Assembly: GCA_013239625.1 (NCBI GenBank)
Contig: MU056146.1
Span: 2,975,812-3,039,811, forward strand
Length of the DNA stretch: 64,000 nt
Origin: Lama guanicoe
Taxonomy: Eukaryota
Direction of reading: 5' to 3'
Of the stretch, positions 15,905 through 64,000 are shown one piece after another. Position numbers and translations under genes: made by a program. Position 1 is the stretch's first letter. Each line of letters starts with the position of its first letter. The notes under the pieces were generated by a model. It did no database searches and was not told the DNA's origin. It worked only from the letters and a program-made list of their open reading frames with translations.

Positions 15905-16148
15905 NNNNNNNNNNNNNNNNNNNNNNNNNNNNNNNNNNNNNNNNNNNNNNNNNNNNNNNNNNNNNNNNNNNNNNNNNNNNNNNNNNNNNNNNNNNNNNNN
16001 NNNNNNNNNNNNNNNNNNNNNNNNNNNNNNNNNNNNNNNNNNNNNNNNNNNNNNNNNNNNNNNNNNNNNNNNNNNNNNNNNNNNNNNNNNNNNNNNNNNN
16101 NNNNNNNNNNNNNNNNNNNNNNNNNNNNNNNNNNNNNNNNNNNNNNNN
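15905..16148. other. Assembly gap (244 N)
   Basis: Run of N. Confidence 1.
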
Positions 16149-26011: not shown

Positions 26012-26613
26012 TTTTTTGATTTTATAAATTGAACTATAGTTGATTTACAGTGTTGTGCTTAATTTTAGGAGTACAGGAATGTAATTCAGATAAATATATA
26101 TATATATGTTCTTTTTCAGAGTCTTTTCCATAAGTTATTACAAGATAGTGAATATAGTTCTCTGTGCTATACAGTAGGTCCTTGTTGTTTATCTATTTTA
26201 TGTATAGTACTGTGTGCCTGTTAATCCCAAACTCCTAATTTATCCCTCCCCCTTATCCCCCTTTGGTAACCATAAATTCGTTTTCTATGTCTATGAGTCT
26301 GCGTCTGTTTTGTAAATAAGTTCATTTGTATTATCTATTTAAATTCCACATATAAATGATATCATATGATATCTGTCTTTCTGTCTGACTTATTTCATTT
26401 AATATGATAATCTCCAGGTCCATCCATGTTGCTGCAGATGGCACCATTTCATTCTTTTTANNNNNNNNNNNNNNNNNNNNNNNNNNNNNNNNNNNNNNNN
26501 NNNNNNNNNNNNNNNNNNNNNNNNNNNNNNNNNNNNNNNNNNNNNNNNNNNNNNNNNNNNNNNNNNNNNNNNNNNNNNNNNNNNNNNNNNNNNNNNNNNN
26601 NNNNNNNNNNAAG
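26012..26613 (-). mobile_element. L1 3' portion spanning an assembly gap
   Basis: attgaactatagttgatttacagtgttgtg...gtccatccatgttgctgcagatggc; TSD tattgtc(t/c)tcttt at 26002-14 and 26614-26. Confidence 0.85.
26461..26610. other. Assembly gap (150 N)
   Basis: Run of N. Confidence 1.
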
Positions 26614-28794
26614 TATTGTCCTCTTTCAGTAAAAGTTTACAACTTCATGGATGATGATGAACTCAGACCTTCAGTACTAACTTTGTTGGGAGGACAAAGG
26701 AAGCCTCCTCTTCTTGCAGATAGAATAATCATGATATAATAAGAAGCATTTGCTGTGCCACCTGCCTAGGGCTGCGTCTAATCCCCGCAGTGATGGAGGA
26801 AGAGCCCCTGTAGTAACAGAGGACACCGAGGATGACAGAGGTTAGCTCAGTCGCGCCAGGTCACAGAGCCTGCGACTCGTGTTACTGGGCTTCCAGGCAT
26901 GACACGCAACTCCTGACCAGACCTCACCTCCATACTCTCTCTTGGGGAGACGGCAAAGACCATCCAAGCTGGTGAGGGATTCAAAGTAACTCAGGTGTCA
27001 CGCTGAGGTTAATAAAGAGTGAGGAGGAATCTGCGTGCTTTTGTACGCTTGACAAGGACAATTCAGGATCGTGGCGTGTGCCCACTTTGAAAGAACAGGG
27101 TCTCTAAGGGAGGTTTAGAGAGAAGTGTAATTGCAGCAAAGAAGGAGTGAGAAGAATATTAGGTGGGACCAAAATGCTTTACCTTTATCATCTAGGTTTT
27201 CTCTTTTAATATAGTCTTTAAATGTGGTGAAGCACTTGGAAATTAATACATACATGAAATATTGGGTGAGCACATTGATACTATCTGAGTAATTTAGATG
27301 CTTCATGTAATGGTTGGAGTGAGAGAGGACAATGATTTTGGGTGCAGGGGCTGCTGTTTAGACTGAATGATTTGCTTTCCTTCTTTGGGTCTGGCTTCCT
27401 AAACTGTAAAGCCCACGGGTTGGTCCAAATCAGTCTACTAGATCCCAACACCCTGTAGGAGGCGCTAGGGATGGAATGATAAAGATGCATTTCCTCTCTC
27501 AGAAAGATCTTTAGGAGCCCTTTACCCCTTAAATTCTGTGATTCTTCATCAAGGCAAAGACTGATAGGTTGGTGTGAATTATTTGAACATGCCTAGCTAC
27601 GAATGACATAAAAAATTATTCATATGAAGAATCGGCAATAAAAATTTGAATAAAGGGTTATGGTTGGTAGTATACACGTGGATGTCCATCAAATTCATGA
27701 TTTACAAGGCCCACTCTTTCTGGCTTGTGATGTAACTAAACATCGCAAAGATATAATATAGCAGTGAGATGATGCTTACGTGAATATATTATATTTTTAT
27801 GAAATGTAATGCATCATTCTACTAAAGAGGAACCAACGTCTGAAAATGAGTCCTGTAGATTCTAATTTCTGTACTGTGCTAGGCCTTCTAGTGAATTATC
27901 TTCCCCCCACAATTTGCATTTCCTTTTACAGCGTGGAAGCAAAATAAGCTTCTTTGTTTGCACTGGTTTCAGAATTAAATTAGTTTGTATATTTGTTCTC
28001 TCCTCCTCTTCCTGGATTCGGTTTCTGAGTAAACAGTTATTTTCATTAAATTCTCTTTTATTTGGCTTTAGCTGTTTAGTTACTAGAATTATTCTGGGTG
28101 GCTGTCACTGTTATATTTTTCAATCAGATATCTGTCCACTGTTTTAAGTGGCACTGAACTGGTTCACTTCCATTTTCTATTGCTCACCTCGCTTTCTGGT
28201 ACTGTGATTTCTTTAGCTAGATCTCACCCCTGCCGTGGTCTGATCTTTTTAAAAATTATGTTTTAATGTATCTAAACACCATACAGGTTTGGTAAAATAC
28301 GAAAAAGATGATCACCAATTTGATGTTTAGTGAGTATGGACAGATTACAGGGAAGAAGAAAATAAATGACATTCATCACAGAGATTGTTTTGAAAGTTAA
28401 TGGCAAACTTGGAGTCTTGAGAAACAGCAAGAATTACCTTGTTTGTAAAACCCAGAATGTCAACCTTTCTTTTCGATTAACCTAGAAATGACCTCTGACA
28501 GAACGAAAACCAGCCATACTTTTCAATTTCAAGAGAAAAGATCTAAAAAGTTATTTCTACCTCATAAAAAAGTGCAATAAGATTCTAAATTCCCACAGAA
28601 ACTCTTCACCTACCTTACAGCCCATCAGAAACCATCAGCGCTCTGTAGGCCAGCATTCATAAAGTTTCGCGGGCGTCTTTGATGGAGTGTGTGGCGGGGG
28701 GATGGAGAGGGAGGGTTTTAGGGCAAGGAGGGAGGGAGCAAGGCAGTTTCTGTTAAGTTACTAAGAAAATATAGAAGATTTTAAAAATGTGCTT

Positions 28795-33410: not shown

Positions 33411-33597
33411 NNNNNNNNNNNNNNNNNNNNNNNNNNNNNNNNNNNNNNNNNNNNNNNNNNNNNNNNNNNNNNNNNNNNNNNNNNNNNNNNNNNNNNNNNN
33501 NNNNNNNNNNNNNNNNNNNNNNNNNNNNNNNNNNNNNNNNNNNNNNNNNNNNNNNNNNNNNNNNNNNNNNNNNNNNNNNNNNNNNNNNNNNNNNNNN
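33411..33597. other. Assembly gap (187 N)
   Basis: Run of N. Confidence 1.
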
Positions 33598-55926: not shown

Positions 55927-56169
<243 letters not shown>

Positions 56170-57627
56170 TAATCTTCAGAAGACAAGATGGGATTCTGAA
56201 ACAGTTGGTTATAAAAGTCATCTCATTCTTATGTCTGCTTCTGGTCTTAATTGGAATATTGAAAAGTAATGAGATCTTCCTTTTAGGTCAAGAATTAGGT
56301 TATTTAAGAAACCTTATCACTATTAATCCACTCATGCAATGCCCAAATTTTCAACTCCATATTTCTTCTGAAATATTCATTTGATGACTAAGTTACTATT
56401 TCTTCCAGAGATCTAATTACAATAGCGCATTTCTTATTCATCTGCTTCAGTTATTTATTCGATTATGATATAGTGTAACTTTATTATGAATTTGCTTTAT
56501 ATCTAAAGTTTTCTGCTTGAAAGACCTTGCCAAGAGACCCCAAATCAATGTAACTACCTTTTTTTTTTTTCTTTCTGTGTGTCTTTTAAGAGATGGAATC
56601 CTTAGAAATAGTCACTCTCTGATCCATTTAAATGTGTGTCAGGGGACTGAATACATATCTTTGAAGCAATTTGCTTGGAGAATACAACCATAAATGTAAT
56701 AAACACGATTTTTCAAATGTGTTTTAAAGATCAAATTTTGCTATAAAAAATGAGAAGCTCATAATTTCAAAGAAATACGGCCTGATTGTTTTCAGTGCAA
56801 TTTATAGCACTCTAAACAATTTATATACCTGGGATTGTTGGTGCTCTTTTGTTGCTGTGCCAATTATCTTGATGTAAAATTAACAGATAAAAGCCTTAAG
56901 GTCATAAAACACTTGAACCACATTGGATTATGTCATATAAACTCAGATCTCAAGGGTTTCTGGTTATGAAAATACTTTTATTAGTCACTGTTATAAATCA
57001 CTGTATCATTTTAGTTAATATCCTTCTACAGCACAGAACTCATAAGATTAAATTGGTAGCATTTGGCCTCAAAGTAAGTACATTAAGTATTTCTCTCTGT
57101 AAAAATGAAATGTACTTATAACACAAAGGCGTCTCCACAAAGTGCCAAAGTGCAGGGGTAAGTGGTGTCATTAACCACTGAATTATGTTATAAATTTATT
57201 ACTGTTTACTAGCAAATAAAATCCCCTCTTCAGTCTAGGTTTTGAAAAAGGAATCATCTGGGTAACTGCTTCGACTTTGTACTTTACCTTAGTTATATCT
57301 CTTCTCTATTCGGTTTCAGGAGAATTTTAAAAATTAGTCACCTTTTTTCTTTTAAACGATCAATTAGATTCCACCAAATGACTAGCCAGTTGTAAAGAAA
57401 TGATGGTTTCATTAGATTCCATTGTTTGGATTTCTACTGTTCAAATTCCTTTGTATGTCAAGATCCTATTAACCAGAGTACAAATTGTGAGTGTGGGTCT
57501 GACCCCTCTCTCTCTCCTTCTTCTTCTTCTTCTCTTTTTTTTCTATTTTAATTGGCTCTAACTTAGTTATTGAAACAATTCAGAATGTTCATAAACTCTG
57601 ATTTAAGAACTGGGCACAATGCAAGAT

Positions 57628-57750
57628 AAATAAGTTCTAGACAGCAGCTGTACAACATTGATCACAATACTGTATTGTGTGCTTAAAAACTGGTTAAGAG
57701 GATAGATCTCAGGTTAAATATTCTTACCATTGGAAAATAAAATTTAAAAA
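57628..57750 (+). mobile_element. L1M 3'UTR fragment
   Basis: aataagttctag...ctgtacaacat...aatactgtattgtgtgcttaaaa...taagaggatagatctcaggttaa. Confidence 0.7.
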
Positions 57751-57874
57751 CCAATGAGATACATTATGCATTTAGTTAAAACTGCATTGATTTTAAATAA
57801 TATAATGACATCTCTGACTGCTAATTAATTTTTTCCCCTTTGAAACAGAAGCAGTTTTCTCTCCCAGGAGAGAG

Positions 57875-57876
<2 letters not shown>

Positions 57877-57906
<30 letters not shown>
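57877..57906. repeat. (AC)15 microsatellite
   Basis: Direct reading. Confidence 0.95.
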
Positions 57907-57912
<6 letters not shown>

Positions 57913-60288
57913 ACTCAAACAGGGGAAACAGAGCAGGAAAAATAGTTTTCTCAAGGCAACGGTGTTTATACAACGTAGTATAGCTTAAATAAAACATCAG
58001 CACTGAGACTTTCACATGATATTTAAAATCTAGGAGATGTGAAAATTGGAATTTGAACTTTTTTTTATAAAGGGGCTTCATTGGTCATCCTCAAAATGCC
58101 CCCAATATAAGGGTCTTGAAGAATCTTGACAAATAGCAAACTGATTTAGGATCTTCTATTTTATGTACCCCCCCAATATATTTAATCACTTTTTTCTGAA
58201 AAGAATAGGTAATGGTTAATCATATGATCATGAGGAAAAATAAAAAAAGGACCAAACTCAAGGTGTATAAGGACCAGAGTCAGTGCACAGAAATTTAAAT
58301 CAGTAAGCCACTTTTATTCTAAAATGTTCTCTCACTGCACATAGTACTTACTTCCTCATAGGTGTGGCTTCAGGCTCCATAAAGGAGAATGACAGTTTTA
58401 TTAATTTTTTATTCGAGTAAATTCTGATTCTTTCCCAAATTGTAAGAATTAGCAATTTGTAATTCACAGCCAGCCATAAACCCACCTGGGGCTACTTGCC
58501 CAGCCCCTAACACTAAGGGACTCTTTCCACTTCCAAAAGAGCTGCATAATCTTATTCTTGAGAAACATAAGCCAGCCTTGAAGCTAACATCAGAATCTCC
58601 ATTTGCAGCCTTTGGGCCCCCCAAAGCTTTCTTCCCTTTGAAGGTTCAACATAGTTCTGGATGGTGGAAAGGCTGGAGCGGTTACCTTGGCCAGATTACG
58701 CTGTGCAACAGTCAGACAAAATCATCTTCACGATCCATGCAGTCCGTGCAATCCATGCATTGGTGAACGGTCCTGATGAGCCTGACATAGATTTCAGCCT
58801 ATTTGGAATGTTTATAAACAAGTCTTATGTTACCTACTCCTGCTTTAATTTTCCCCTGAAAAGATGTTTCCTGAATATTTATAAGAAGCATGTGTCCCAG
58901 AAAAGAAGGATAATTGGAAAAGACTTCCTTGAATTTCTCTGTTTCAGCAGAGAGAAGGCTTCAAAGGAAAGCATCAAAAGACAATCCCAGTCACCACGCC
59001 CCTTTTGCCAAAGTGAAAATAACTTAACTATAGGGCTGTCGGAGAGTTGCTTTTGGCTACCATTTAAAATGAGTACCTGTGGCATTAATTTTGGGGTCTG
59101 TTGGTAAACGTTCCTGTATCAGTTACTATAAAGCTATTTTTTATGTGAAATGGTAATTATGGGGTTTGTTTTAGAAATAAAGCTCCTAATCCCAATCTAG
59201 GTAAACTACTGAAAATAACTGAAAACAAAGCAAAACTCTCTCTTAAATGTGGATCAGTCCCATCCTTTAACCTCTTGCTGCGTTTATAAAGAAGTTGTCA
59301 ATTCTTCCATCATGAGGAAACATTCCATGTGTTCCTCCAAAGTTACATGGGCATAAAAAACGGTTTAGGTGCAGCTTTCAGACATACTACCATTAAGTTC
59401 TTTTTATTAGCCGGTCGTGAATGAATGCACCTGTATAAATTCCACTGCTGACTCCTCAGAGGGTAGCGCAGTCCTTCCTGCCAGCAGCCATGATCTGTTC
59501 AAGATGCAAATGCCATCAACTCATTCGGTTAACAAACTGCTAACAAAGACCCATCCTTGTGCAGTCTTTTCCCTGTTCCCAACCCTCACCCTGGCAACCC
59601 TCTCTCTCAGCCACTCTTACTGATTTTCAGTTAAACAGACTAGAGGTGATTATTTGATTATTTGCCCTTGGGAAGAGATTGGTTCTCTTCCTTTTTATTT
59701 AAATTTATAAACTGTGAATTCTCTTAAATAACTTCATGTAGAACAATGATTTCTTTAAAGAAAATTCCAGTGGACCGTCACTCAAAGTATAGGGTGTAAA
59801 AATAAATCAACAGAAAATAGCTCGACTTTTAAGATCTGAGCCTACCAAGGTGTTTCAGAGCATCGTCAGTAACGGACAATTCGTTGTATATCTCAGGATG
59901 TTACAACACAACATGCTGTACAGCTCCTGGACACACTTGTGCAGGGGGTGTCATTCATTTTACTCTAGCTGATTTCTTAGAGCAAAAAATGTACTGTAAA
60001 CTGCGTATCTTAGAGGAGCACACTTTATTAAAGGCAATTTTTTAAAAAATAGAAGGTAATTCATCCAGTTGGCGATGAGTTAGACCATTGAATCTCCAGT
60101 AAGTATCCGACATTGTACGGTGTGTGCAGACTCTCAAACAGCCTACTGGTCATTCGGAGGGAGTTTGGGGCGGGGGTGGGGGGAATGCCGCGCTGCAAAG
60201 CTGAACGTTATACCTGTGTTGTGCTATTATGTATAGAATAATCTCTCTTTCTTTTTCCTTTGAATTTGTTTTTCCTCTTGCTTCCCAG

Positions 60289-60318
60289 AGGATTGTGTGG
60301 AGGACAATGCAACATAGT
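60289..60318 (+). CDS. GPC6: Candidate alternative 30-nt GPC6 cassette exon encoding RIVWRTMQHS
   Basis: About 45-nt pyrimidine-rich tract ending cttcccAG (60287-88), 10 open codons in phase 0, donor AGT|GTAAGC at 60319. Phase matches the end of exon 6. Confidence 0.65.
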
Positions 60319-62208
60319 GTAAGCTTCGGTCTTCTTACCTTCCTCTCATGCTCATTTGTCTTTGTACGGTCATTCTGGAGAGTTTCTGAGAAATTCCACC
60401 TCCACTTTCTCTTTCCTAATTGTCTAGAGAGCGAATTGAACAGTACCTGACCAGCGGGTTTAGTCACTTTCTCTCGGCTTGGTGTTTGTGGCTAACAACC
60501 CTTTTTGGTATTCTTTCCCAATGGTAAGGTTTTCAGTCTAAGCTTTGTGTTAAGACTAGCTCATTTGGTGGCTGATTTAAATTCTATCCCAATGTTCAGA
60601 CTATGTGTAGTCTGCCTGAAAAACTAGCTCTTCCCTGATAAAATATATTGGCTTTTTTCTTCTTGTGCAGAGCGAATAATTACCTCCCTAATAATAACAA
60701 GAAACCAACATCAGCTCTCATGCATATGGAGCTAATTTTTCCATTAGCTGGGGCATAGAGAATTTAGGAGGATAAAAAAACTTTTCAGTATAGGTTGTTT
60801 ATTCTTTTTTTTTTTTCCTACTGGAATTTACTGATGTCTTTTGAGCATTTAGGGAGGGAGCATTGGATTTTTTTTTACTATAAAGTGATTTGTATTGGGG
60901 ATGTGGACAAGCACACCCAGGTTACCTTACTTGACTTCATGTATTAACTGTAATAATCAGATAGTTAAGTTATCCAGTTGGTTTTCAAAATAACCACTCC
61001 ATGCTGGCATTACCACTTGATAAAGACCTGAACCCTACATGGCATCAGGGACCCAGGAGAGAAGACGCCTTCCACCTGATGAGTTCATTTATTCACGCAG
61101 CCCACCTAAGACATAGTGGTGCGACAGGTCTGCCTGGCCTTAAGCTCAGGCAGCGGCAACACTATGTCTCAAATTCCTCCGTTAAAATTCATTTGTTTTC
61201 AAAGGAAATTATCCTCTGAGTAGTTGCCCTATTTAGCATTCCAGCTCTCTGAGTCCAGCAGTTTGGTTAACGGTAGAAAGTTAAGAGGTGAATCTGAAAC
61301 AGGATCACTCTGAAAGGGAAGCTCTCGAGGAAGGAACAGGGGAGACGGATAGCTGAAGGTCTCGGTGCTCAGTGGGAAGTGGGGGAAGGAAACATCACGG
61401 CTGAGATAAGTCAGGCTTCCATGAGTTTGGTCCAGTTGGTACAACCAGACCAGCCCCAGGTGACAGAGGATGTGCCTTCCTCTCCAGCACATTGTCTCAG
61501 TGTCTCCCGATGTTCCAGCAGCTGAGCTAGTCCAGTCTCCTAATCTAATGGTTATTATGACCCTTGTAGTTTCCCGCAAGAAGAACGAGGTCCTTGAACA
61601 TCCTGGCAAGAATGCCAATCCTAATATGATACCCACCCACTCCCCAGGGATGCTGGCCTTCCCTGCTTGCCTCCTGTAATCTTCTTTAACCAGGCCAAAA
61701 AAATCAGATGTCTGTTGTTAGATAACACAATGCGATTTCTGAAATGTACTGGTATGCCACTGGTGTCAAATACATTGTCAACATTACAATGTAGAGATTT
61801 AAGCATTTGCAAAATACCATCGAGCTGTGCGCGTTTATTGTTCACAAACAAAATGCACAGAGCAACTCACACTCTGACGTCGTTTCCTGCCTGATGGTTA
61901 GTCCCAGTTTCAGAGTAAAATGCTGGTCATAAAAATGTTCTTCCATGCTTCTTTGGGACCATTCTGGGGTGATTTAGGAAGTCTTGGTTGTAAGGATGCG
62001 GGAAAAGTGTCTGTTATTCATTTTAAATTGCCATGGCATTTTCATTGTCACCTCAAAGGATTCTGCATCCTGCTAAATCCACTATTTTGCATCTCAAAAG
62101 GATGTCAGGCTGTGTTTAAGGAAGTGCTTTATTATCTAGAGCCTCAGCCACTGTCTTTAGGTGAAACTGATAGTTCTCATGTTCCACCTCGACAGAGACA
62201 CACAGACA

Positions 62209-62211
<3 letters not shown>

Positions 62212-62243
<32 letters not shown>
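62212..62243. repeat. (AC)16 microsatellite with degenerate 5' extension
   Basis: Direct reading. Confidence 0.95.
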
Positions 62244-62246
<3 letters not shown>

Positions 62247-64000
62247 CAGCCTTTGCTCGGCCTGGAACCTCAGTAGCAACAACAAACCAGATTCTCCACT
62301 TTAATTAGTTTTCTGAGGATAAATGGGTCAAGGCCAGATTGGCTTTCAGCCTCGGCAGCCCCTGAATAAATTATGCCCGGTTCATCCCAGCACACAAACA
62401 GCTACTGCTCAATCCACTTCAGACCGTGAACTGCCCAGTGCTGCCTGAACTTGCCTTACCTATTTGCTGCAAAATCCCACTGAGATACCCCAGTTTCATT
62501 TTCCACGAACCCTTGGTAAGAGCAGACGTGAAATCCGGCGAGCTTTCAAGCAGGGAGAAAATACAAAACTTTAAAACCAAACCACCCAACTCACTGGGTC
62601 CCGGTTCCTGCCCTTCTCAGGGCAGCATCAGCCTCCTGTGTTGGCCGAGGGGAGCCCCCTGACACAGCCTTCCTTCCGCGTAGGGGGCTTGTGGTTGACG
62701 AGGCCCAAGTGGAGACTGTCATAAGACACACATACAAAATGATGGCTTATCTCCAAGACATGCTGCTTATTCCACAGGCTTGGAGGAAGCACAAATCTAA
62801 TTCAATGATCTGCACAGTTGGAAACCTGGATGGAATGCCTGCTCCTTATGTGGAATTTTCAGCTCACACCCAGTGGACAGTGGACTATTTTTTACATCCT
62901 TAGGGAGCTATTCTTTCAGGCTTGTGGAAGAGCAGTGAGACTAGAAGAAGCACAGACCTTTCTTTCCGCTCAGGCAAGGCTGTGTTTAATTGCACTGGGC
63001 TGTGTACCATGGGGAGAAATGTACCCCACTGGCTGCGTAACTCCCCGGGAGACGCTGGAGCCCGTTCCGCACCGCTGCTTCACGTCACGTCCAGGGCATC
63101 ATACGGATGCCAGCAATGAACAAAGGTCAGGCCACACATTTTAAAGAGGGAAAACTTTTGCACAGCTTGATTTTGGTGCACAGAGGTCCGAAATCATTTT
63201 GGGGGTAATTTTACCAACAAAACCATTTCAACTCTGTGTTAAACTCTCCTTTGTCCTCCAAAACATTTAAGCAAGAGCTTTGCTGACCTCTATGTCATAA
63301 AAATGATATGTTACACTTTCAGACCCCAAATAGGGCTACACAGATTTTCTATCTATTTTATGATATGTTGATAGGCTTATTTTCCCCTTCAAACATGAAA
63401 ATTTCTTTCAAATTCCTGACCTCAGCTAAACTCAAAACGATGTATTCTGTGGGTATCAATCACCCAATTATGTGTTTATTGAGTTCTTCTCTGTTGCGTA
63501 GCACTTAGTAAAACTTAACTACCATGTACAGCTTACATCATCGTAAGTGGTTGGTGCTAACATCATCAAAAAACCAGAGTTACTATTTGGGGAGTAGGGG
63601 GACCAACATTGCTTTCAAACCAGTTAGACACACCATGTCTCCTCCTGGGAATACTTACCTAGCATAGAGCCCCATAAAATATTAGCATACAGGACATAAG
63701 AATTTGGTTTGGTAACCCAAGGTAGCCTCCACCAATAAGGACTATGTGGAAGGTATTAACAAATGAATCATCGTTGACCAGAGAGGCACATTGAAAACTT
63801 TAGACATCTGTAGCAGCTTTGATCTAGACCATATCTGAAAGCTGGTTTTCCCTTCTTAAGCCAGAAGTCTTTGACCACATCTTAAACAGAGTAAATGAAG
63901 ATGTCGTCGTCAATTCTGAACTGATCAGATGAAAAGGTTCATCTGCTCACTCATTCCTGGTACTTATCCTTTATTCAGCTATCACAGTTGTTTTTGGTGA

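What the first reader, a model, noticed from the sequence alone, without database searches (positions are those of the whole stretch)
60237..60405. Hidden 30-nt GPC6 exon (RIVWRTMQHS) with neural-microexon regulatory motifs
Seen: a 50-nt AG-free pyrimidine-rich zone (60237-86), TGC at -10 to -8 (60279-81), acceptor CAG, exactly 10 sense codons (60289-60318) and donor GTAAGC. Five YCAY motifs lie within 90 nt downstream (60346, 60352, 60370, 60396, 60402), and CTAAC at 60492. It sits about 4.2 kb after exon 6, in a stretch where I recognise no repeats, and matches exon 6's phase 0. Known: UGC near the 3' splice site is the SRRM4/SRRM3 microexon signature; downstream YCAY clusters mark NOVA-enhanced exons; GPC4/6 act in synapse formation and Hedgehog/Wnt signalling. 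Inference: a tissue-regulated isoform reading ...GTSLDRL-RIVWRTMQHS-(next exon), adding a basic/aromatic patch to the core protein that could change ligand binding. From unverified memory, mouse Gpc6 has an isoform 10 aa longer than the canonical one; if this is that exon, it is annotated but its regulation may be unexplored.
Basis: partly seen in the sequence, partly recalled or inferred. Interest (0 to 1): 0.8.

Follow-up and report, generated by a model that had tools for sequence, protein, structure and literature searches.

The report
Known conserved 30-nt GPC6 alternative exon
The 30-base stretch is a genuine alternative exon of the glypican-6 gene, conserved from fish to mammals, but it is already annotated in many species and already listed in published tables as an exon switched on by the neuronal splicing factor SRRM4, so it is not a discovery.

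Summary
Every letter-level claim checks out. The exon is 60289-60318 (RIVWRTMQHS), with a CAG acceptor, a GTAAGC donor, a 50-nt AG-free pyrimidine zone, TGC at -10..-8 and five YCAY within 90 nt downstream. It lies 4,170 nt after GPC6 exon 6 (phase 0).

The exon is real. 65 protein-cluster representatives carry exactly 10 residues at this exon 6/7 junction, with consensus R-[ITV]-[VI]-W-[RKNS]-[TA]-M-Q-H-S. They cover teleosts (gpc6a and gpc6b), gar, bowfin, a salamander, squamates, a bird and mammals. Pig and a transcript-derived ORF have the window's exact peptide. RefSeq pairs a 565-aa "isoform X1" with a 555-aa form in several mammals.

It is not hidden. Head et al. 2021 list human GPC6 event HsaEX0028152 (30 nt) rising from PSI 1 to 58 on SRRM4 expression. 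Torres-Méndez et al. 2022 class a mouse Gpc6 exon at the matching place as Srrm3/4-sensitive.

So the SRRM4 idea is supported for the orthologues. The NOVA idea and the ligand-binding idea are untested.

AlphaFold models put the insert inside an amphipathic helix, just after the disordered loop that carries a furin-like motif.

Verdict: already known, low interest.

The parts
55975..56118 (+). GPC6 exon 6 (48 codons, phase 0-0), ending ...GTSLDRL, donor GTGAGT at 56119
   Evidence: phmmer with its translation gave GPC6 proteins, 100% identical over the exon in Camelus ferus and Scotinomys teguina models.
56119..60288 (+). 4,170-nt intron between exon 6 and the alternative exon
   Evidence: Coordinates. 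The mouse table gives 3.68 kb for the equivalent distance.
60237..60286 (+). AG-free, 82% pyrimidine zone (polypyrimidine tract / AG exclusion zone). It holds TCTCTCT at 60242-60248 and TGC at 60279-60281.
   Evidence: Acceptor ranks 6th of 4,554 by a rough PWM.
60286..60288 (+). CAG acceptor, followed by a second AG at 60289-60290 (tandem CAG|AG)
60289..60318 (+). 30-nt alternative cassette exon encoding RIVWRTMQHS
   Evidence: The peptide is identical in the pig GPC6 model P0187, the Logan transcript ORF P0247 and many cyprinid gpc6a models. 65 cluster representatives carry a 10-aa homologue at the same junction.
60319..60324 (+). Donor GTAAGC, with a second GT two bases upstream at 60317-60318
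60346..60405 (+). Five YCAY motifs within 90 nt downstream of the donor
   Evidence: This count falls in the top 2.4% of 90-nt windows. Function untested.

Best explanation
60289-60318 is the orthologue of a deeply conserved, in-frame 30-nt alternative cassette exon of glypican-6, lying between constitutive exons 6 and 7. Skipping gives the 555-aa protein. Inclusion gives the 565-aa form (RefSeq 'isoform X1'), with R-I-V-W-R-T-M-Q-H-S inserted after Leu384.

Inclusion is most likely low by default and raised by the eMIC-domain splicing factors SRRM4/SRRM3. These act on the pyrimidine-rich, UGC-containing region just upstream of the acceptor, in neurons and possibly neuroendocrine cells.

At the protein level the insert is predicted to lengthen, at its N-terminal end, the amphipathic helix that follows the disordered loop carrying an RSARS (furin-like R-x-x-R) motif. 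The conserved V3, W4 and M7 fall on the helix's hydrophobic face.

Shown here: the letters, the conservation, the annotation in other species and the published SRRM4 response of the human orthologue. A mouse exon at the matching place is also listed as Srrm3/4-sensitive, but at 28 nt. Inferred: the same regulation in this species, the role of the UGC, the helical geometry and any functional consequence.
For: Letters and splice sites. Rarity of such a site pair in the window.

Conservation: the phmmer search with exon 6 already turned up fish models with a homologous insert. Targeted searches found 65 representatives with exactly 10 aa at the junction. R1, W4, M7 and Q8 are invariant. The set includes Sus scrofa (identical), Microcebus, Cebus, Saimiri, Callithrix, Ctenodactylus, Cuculus, Anolis, Crotalus, Phrynocephalus, Pleurodeles, Lepisosteus, Atractosteus, Amia and both teleost paralogues.

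Transcript-level support: the Logan 3.4-kb contig ORF P0247 carries RIVWRTMQHS spliced to VTDIKEKL.

Regulation: Head et al. 2021 (PMC7935315) S6 Data lists GPC6 HsaEX0028152, 30 nt, at PSI 1.04 with inactive SRRM4 and 58.12 with wild-type SRRM4 in MCF7, and 0.78 versus 48.5 in a second sheet. Torres-Méndez et al. 2022 (PMC8797185) Table S2 lists mouse Gpc6 MmuEX0021564, 3.68 kb after the upstream exon, in the class 'eMICsens'. That class is defined from Srrm3/4 knock-down in N2A cells or Srrm4 knockout brain.

Structure: in the AF2 model with the insert, helix 370-397 runs through the insert (378-387), with 10-residue block-mean pLDDT of 69 (371-380) and 84 (381-390). Without the insert the helix is 381-400, and the preceding loop has pLDDT below 50. 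Amphipathic register.
Against: So junction use, tissue pattern and intron-flank conservation were not tested.

The equation of HsaEX0028152 and MmuEX0021564 with this exon rests on gene name, length or position, not on sequence. The mouse table gives 28 nt, not 30.

At 30 nt the exon exceeds the strict 3-27 nt microexon definition. The UGC alone is expected at about 25% of similar acceptors. SRRM4 overexpression at very high levels can include exons that are little used in vivo. Gpc6 does not appear in the supplements of the zebrafish microexon study. Both AF2 models are of middling confidence (mean pLDDT 67-68).
Confidence: 0.85

Rival explanations
1. Chance pseudo-exon: a good acceptor and a fair donor happen to lie 30 nt apart in an intron and are never spliced in.
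For: The donor is only moderate (rank 218 of 3,327). No reads from this species could be examined.
Against: The same 10 codons sit at the same junction in annotated GPC6 proteins from fish to mammals, with four invariant residues, and in a transcript-derived ORF. The peptide is identical in pig.
Confidence: 0.02
2. NOVA1/2 binding to the downstream YCAY cluster is a main enhancer of inclusion, alone or together with SRRM3/4.
For: There are five YCAY within 90 nt after the donor and only one in the 139 nt before the exon. This count falls in the top 2.4% of windows. From general knowledge, downstream YCAY clusters enhance inclusion. [quoted passage not shown]
Against: The excess is modest and was chosen after the fact. 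The motifs are spread over 60 nt rather than packed tightly. No Gpc6 entry was found in the two held supplement files of the NOVA2 paper I could search, nor in full-text searches. Conservation of the motifs could not be checked.
Confidence: 0.25
3. Inclusion is not neuron-restricted. The exon is used at appreciable levels in other tissues, such as endocrine, reproductive or mesenchymal tissue, under other regulators, and SRRM4 responsiveness is only one input.
For: Gene-prediction pipelines call the long form 'isoform X1' in many species. The RNA runs that hold much of this intron are from reproductive tissue, so GPC6 is transcribed there. From general knowledge, GPC6 is expressed widely outside neurons.
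Against: PSI is about 1% in MCF7 and one other cancer line without active SRRM4. The mouse exon falls in an Srrm3/4-sensitive class.
Confidence: 0.2
4. A 28-nt frame-shifting version, made by the tandem acceptor CAG|AG or the tandem donor A|GT|GTAAGC, is a significant product and acts as a poison exon.
For: The mouse table gives 28 nt. Both tandem sites exist in the window.
Against: All 65 annotated inserts are exactly 10 aa and in frame. The human event is 30 nt. The alternative sites (GAG acceptor, GTGTAA donor) depart from consensus.
Confidence: 0.07

Closest known systems
GPC6 565-aa isoform (RefSeq 'glypican-6 isoform X1', e.g. XP_012625206.1 Microcebus murinus; pig UniRef A0A8D1NS50)
   Same: Same gene, same exon 6/7 junction and same 10-aa length. 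The peptide is identical to pig and differs at one residue (I2T) from the primate and gundi forms.
   Different: Nothing of substance. This window simply holds that exon in another mammal. Whether this species' own annotation lists it is unknown to me.
VastDB events HsaEX0028152 (human GPC6, 30 nt) and MmuEX0021564 (mouse Gpc6)
   Same: Same gene. The human event has the same length. The mouse event sits 3.68 kb after the upstream exon, against 4.17 kb here. Both respond to SRRM4 or SRRM3/4.
   Different: Identity is inferred from gene, length and position, because I could not compare sequences. The mouse entry is listed as 28 nt.
SRRM3/SRRM4 (eMIC)-dependent neuronal microexons
   Same: It is short, in frame and deeply conserved. 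It has a long pyrimidine-rich AG-free zone with UCUC and UGC close to the acceptor. The orthologues respond to SRRM4 or Srrm3/4.
   Different: At 30 nt it is just above the strict 3-27 nt limit. Neural enrichment was not shown here. The mouse exon is in the weaker 'sensitive' class, not the 'dependent' class.
NOVA-enhanced exons with downstream YCAY clusters
   Same: There are five YCAY within 90 nt downstream of the donor.
   Different: There is no binding or knockout evidence, and the cluster is loose and only modestly above background.

Membership tests
GPC6 alternative exon of the 565-aa isoform | Lies between the exon ending ...GTSLDRL and the exon starting VTDIKEKL, phase 0-0 | tested here: met
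   The upstream exon is in the window and ends in phase 0, and the candidate is 30 nt and open. The downstream exon is not in the window. Orthologues show the insert at exactly this junction.
GPC6 alternative exon of the 565-aa isoform | Encodes the conserved 10-aa peptide R-x-[VI]-W-x-[TA]-M-Q-H-S | tested here: met
   RIVWRTMQHS is the commonest variant (25 of 65 representatives) and is identical to the pig model.
GPC6 alternative exon of the 565-aa isoform | Spliced into mRNA in this species | not testable with these tools
SRRM3/4 (eMIC)-dependent microexons | Length 3-27 nt (strict) or up to 51 nt (broad) | tested here: inconclusive
   30 nt fails the strict limit and meets the broad one.
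SRRM3/4 (eMIC)-dependent microexons | UGC-containing, pyrimidine-rich enhancer close upstream of the 3' splice site | tested here: met
   TGC lies at -10..-8 and TCTCTCT at -47..-41 in a 50-nt AG-free zone. About 25% of pyrimidine-rich acceptors have such a TGC by chance.
SRRM3/4 (eMIC)-dependent microexons | Inclusion rises with SRRM4 and falls on Srrm3/4 loss | not tested
   Not tested for this species. Published for the human orthologue (PSI 1 to 58) and for the mouse exon at the matching place ('eMICsens').
SRRM3/4 (eMIC)-dependent microexons | Neural-enriched inclusion | not tested
   No tissue data could be laid.
NOVA-enhanced exons | YCAY cluster within about 200 nt downstream of the exon | tested here: met
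   5 in 90 nt, top 2.4% of windows. The cluster is loose.
NOVA-enhanced exons | NOVA binding (CLIP) and a PSI change in Nova knockouts | not tested
   No data found.
Glypican family (Pfam PF01153) | Host protein matches the glypican domain | tested here: met
   All orthologues carry precomputed PF01153. P0247 matches glypican-1 chain 4ad7_A at E = 1.5e-165.

The most novel reading that the evidence does not exclude
The 10-residue helical insert, kept for over 400 million years next to the cleaved linker of GPC6, may define a neuron-type GPC6. Its processing or partner binding (for instance to synaptic organisers, or to Hedgehog/Wnt components) would differ from the astrocyte or mesenchymal 555-aa form. 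I found no dedicated functional study of this isoform difference in the searchable literature.
Probability: 0.25. Interest if true: 0.55.

Novelty: already known. Interest (0 to 1): 0.2.

Why it matters
As a sequence feature it adds nothing new. The exon is annotated in many vertebrates, and its SRRM4 response is in published tables.

Its residual value is as a pointer. The exon is very old, and four of its ten residues are invariant among the forms compared here, from fish to mammals. It alters a helix beside the processing loop of a proteoglycan implicated in synapse formation and skeletal growth. I found no paper that studies what the two isoforms do differently.

Tried and rejected
After that I sent no window letters of 55951-55994 to any search tool.

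So conservation of the UGC, the YCAY motifs and the intron flanks could not be tested.

First homologue search: I used P0028, which turned out to be glypican-4. It showed no insert among about 60 GPC4 and 40 GPC6 representatives. This reflects clustering at 90% identity and is not evidence that the insert is absent.

Literature: full-text searches for Gpc6 with microexon, Srrm4, Nova2, cassette exon or splice variant gave nothing relevant in main texts. Irimia 2014 is not held. No supplements are held for PMC9303857 and PMC12868881. There is no Gpc6 entry in the zebrafish microexon supplements or the NOVA2 supplements.

Rejected: CTAAC at 60492 as a relevant branch point, because it lies downstream of the exon.

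Full report
**Observation**

- GPC6 exon 6 is 55975-56118. It has 48 codons, is phase 0-0, ends ...GTSLDRL and has the donor GTGAGT.
- After an intron of 4,170 nt comes a 50-nt zone (60237-60286) with no AG and 82% pyrimidines. It holds TCTCTCT (60242-48) and TGC (60279-81).
- A CAG acceptor follows, then ten sense codons AGG ATT GTG TGG AGG ACA ATG CAA CAT AGT (60289-60318, RIVWRTMQHS), then the donor GTAAGC.
- Five YCAY lie within 90 nt downstream, and CTAAC is at 60492.

**Is it more than chance?**

These criteria were fitted after the fact.
- A rough PWM ranks the acceptor 6th of 4,554 and the donor 218th of 3,327.
- The YCAY count is in the top 2.4% of 90-nt windows.
- A TGC at that distance occurs at about a quarter of pyrimidine-rich acceptors, so it carries no weight alone.

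**What it is**

A phmmer search with the exon 6 translation against 1.84 billion representatives returned GPC6 fragments and full proteins. Five fish models already showed a homologous 10-residue block directly after ...SLDRL.

Two targeted searches then found 65 cluster representatives with exactly ten residues between ...SLDRL and V-x-D-I-K-E-K-L.
- The consensus is R-[ITV]-[VI]-W-[RKNS]-[TA]-M-Q-H-S, with R1, W4, M7 and Q8 invariant.
- The representatives come from teleost gpc6a and gpc6b, gars, bowfin, a salamander, lizards, a snake, a cuckoo and mammals.
- The pig model (UniRef A0A8D1NS50) and an ORF from a 3.4-kb Logan contig (P0247, a spliced transcript) carry the window's exact peptide joined to the mammalian exon 7 sequence.
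- Cluster listings show 565-aa 'isoform X1' beside 555-aa forms in Microcebus, Cebus, Saimiri, Callithrix and Ctenodactylus.
- They also show the label 'isoform X2' on the 555-aa form in cattle, cats, rabbit, hamster, rat and others.
- The insert follows Leu384.

The exon is therefore real and at least as old as bony vertebrates. It predates the teleost duplication and is widely annotated. The window itself is mammalian, since exon 6 is 100% identical in protein to camel and rodent models.

**Regulation**

Main-text literature searches were empty, but two supplements were informative.
- Head et al. 2021 (PMC7935315), S6 Data, lists exons that rise on SRRM4 induction. It lists GPC6, event HsaEX0028152, length 30. 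PSI is 1.04 with an inactive SRRM4 mutant and 58.12 with wild-type SRRM4 in MCF7 after 24 h. A second sheet gives 0.78 versus 48.5.
- Torres-Méndez et al. 2022 (PMC8797185), Table S2, lists mouse Gpc6 MmuEX0021564. It sits 3.68 kb after the upstream exon and 58.8 kb before the next, and is classed 'eMICsens'. That class is defined by loss of inclusion on Srrm3/4 knock-down in N2A cells or in Srrm4-knockout cortex and hippocampus.

Equating these events with the window's exon rests on gene, length and position, because I could not compare sequences.

One detail is unexplained. The mouse entry is 28 nt. The window does have a tandem acceptor (CAG|AG) and a tandem donor (A|GT|GTAAGC) that could give 28-nt, frame-shifting versions. 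However, every annotated insert is ten residues and the alternative sites are weak.

The NOVA part remains an untested possibility.

**Protein consequence**

These points are inferred.
- AlphaFold2 models built on alignments A1 and A2 have middling confidence (mean pLDDT 67 and 68).
- With the insert, one helix runs from residue 370 to 397 of P0247, straight through the insert at 378-387. The block-mean pLDDT is 69 for residues 371-380 and 84 for 381-390.
- Without the insert, the helix is 381-400 of the 555-aa protein.
- The stretch before it, which contains an RSARS furin-like motif about 33 residues upstream, has pLDDT below 50 in both models.
- On a helical wheel the conserved V3, W4 and M7 fall on the same face as L374, L377, V388, I391 and L395.

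So the exon seems to add nearly three turns to an amphipathic helix while keeping its hydrophobic stripe. Whether this changes processing or binding is unknown.

**Limits**

- As a result there is no junction, tissue or intron-conservation evidence for this species.
Exon 7 lies outside the window.
- The scan's earlier notes held nothing on this exon beyond the finding itself.

**Verdict**

The core interpretation is right, but the feature is already annotated and its SRRM4 response is already tabulated. Novelty: already known. Interest is low. The only open question is what the two isoforms do differently.

Noticed in passing
60286-60290 and 60317-60324: A tandem acceptor CAG|AG and a tandem donor A|GT|GTAAGC could each give a 28-nt frame-shifting version of the exon. 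A published mouse table lists the Gpc6 event as 28 nt, while the human one is 30 nt.
   Followed up: partly
P0190 (dog GPC6 model, UniRef A0A8I3RTW0): This model carries an unrelated 25-residue insert (YTHWWMESHLQHLTYEGPAQLQQSQ) at the same exon 6/7 junction. That points to another cryptic or species-specific exon in this intron in dog.
   Followed up: no
P0015, P0019, P0021, P0053, P0196 (fish GPC6 models): These gene models include the 10-aa exon but then read through its donor into the intron (the translation continues VS..., VR...). These look like annotation errors that truncate the protein.
   Followed up: partly
window 15905-16148, 26461-26610, 33411-33597: Three runs of N (gaps or masked stretches). 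They were left as they are.
   Followed up: no
window about 26334-26636, - strand: An open stretch beside an N run translates to a LINE-1 ORF2-like tail (...EISQTERQISYDIIYMWNLN...). It is an interspersed repeat fragment typical of a mammalian intron.
   Followed up: no
window about 62161-62301: A (CA/TG)n microsatellite, seen as THTHTHTH / VCVCVCV in translation.
   Followed up: no
(runs X1, X3, X7, X8): Reproductive-tissue RNA-seq runs hold 8-26% of the sampled words of this mostly intronic stretch. This suggests abundant GPC6 pre-mRNA in that tissue.
   Followed up: no
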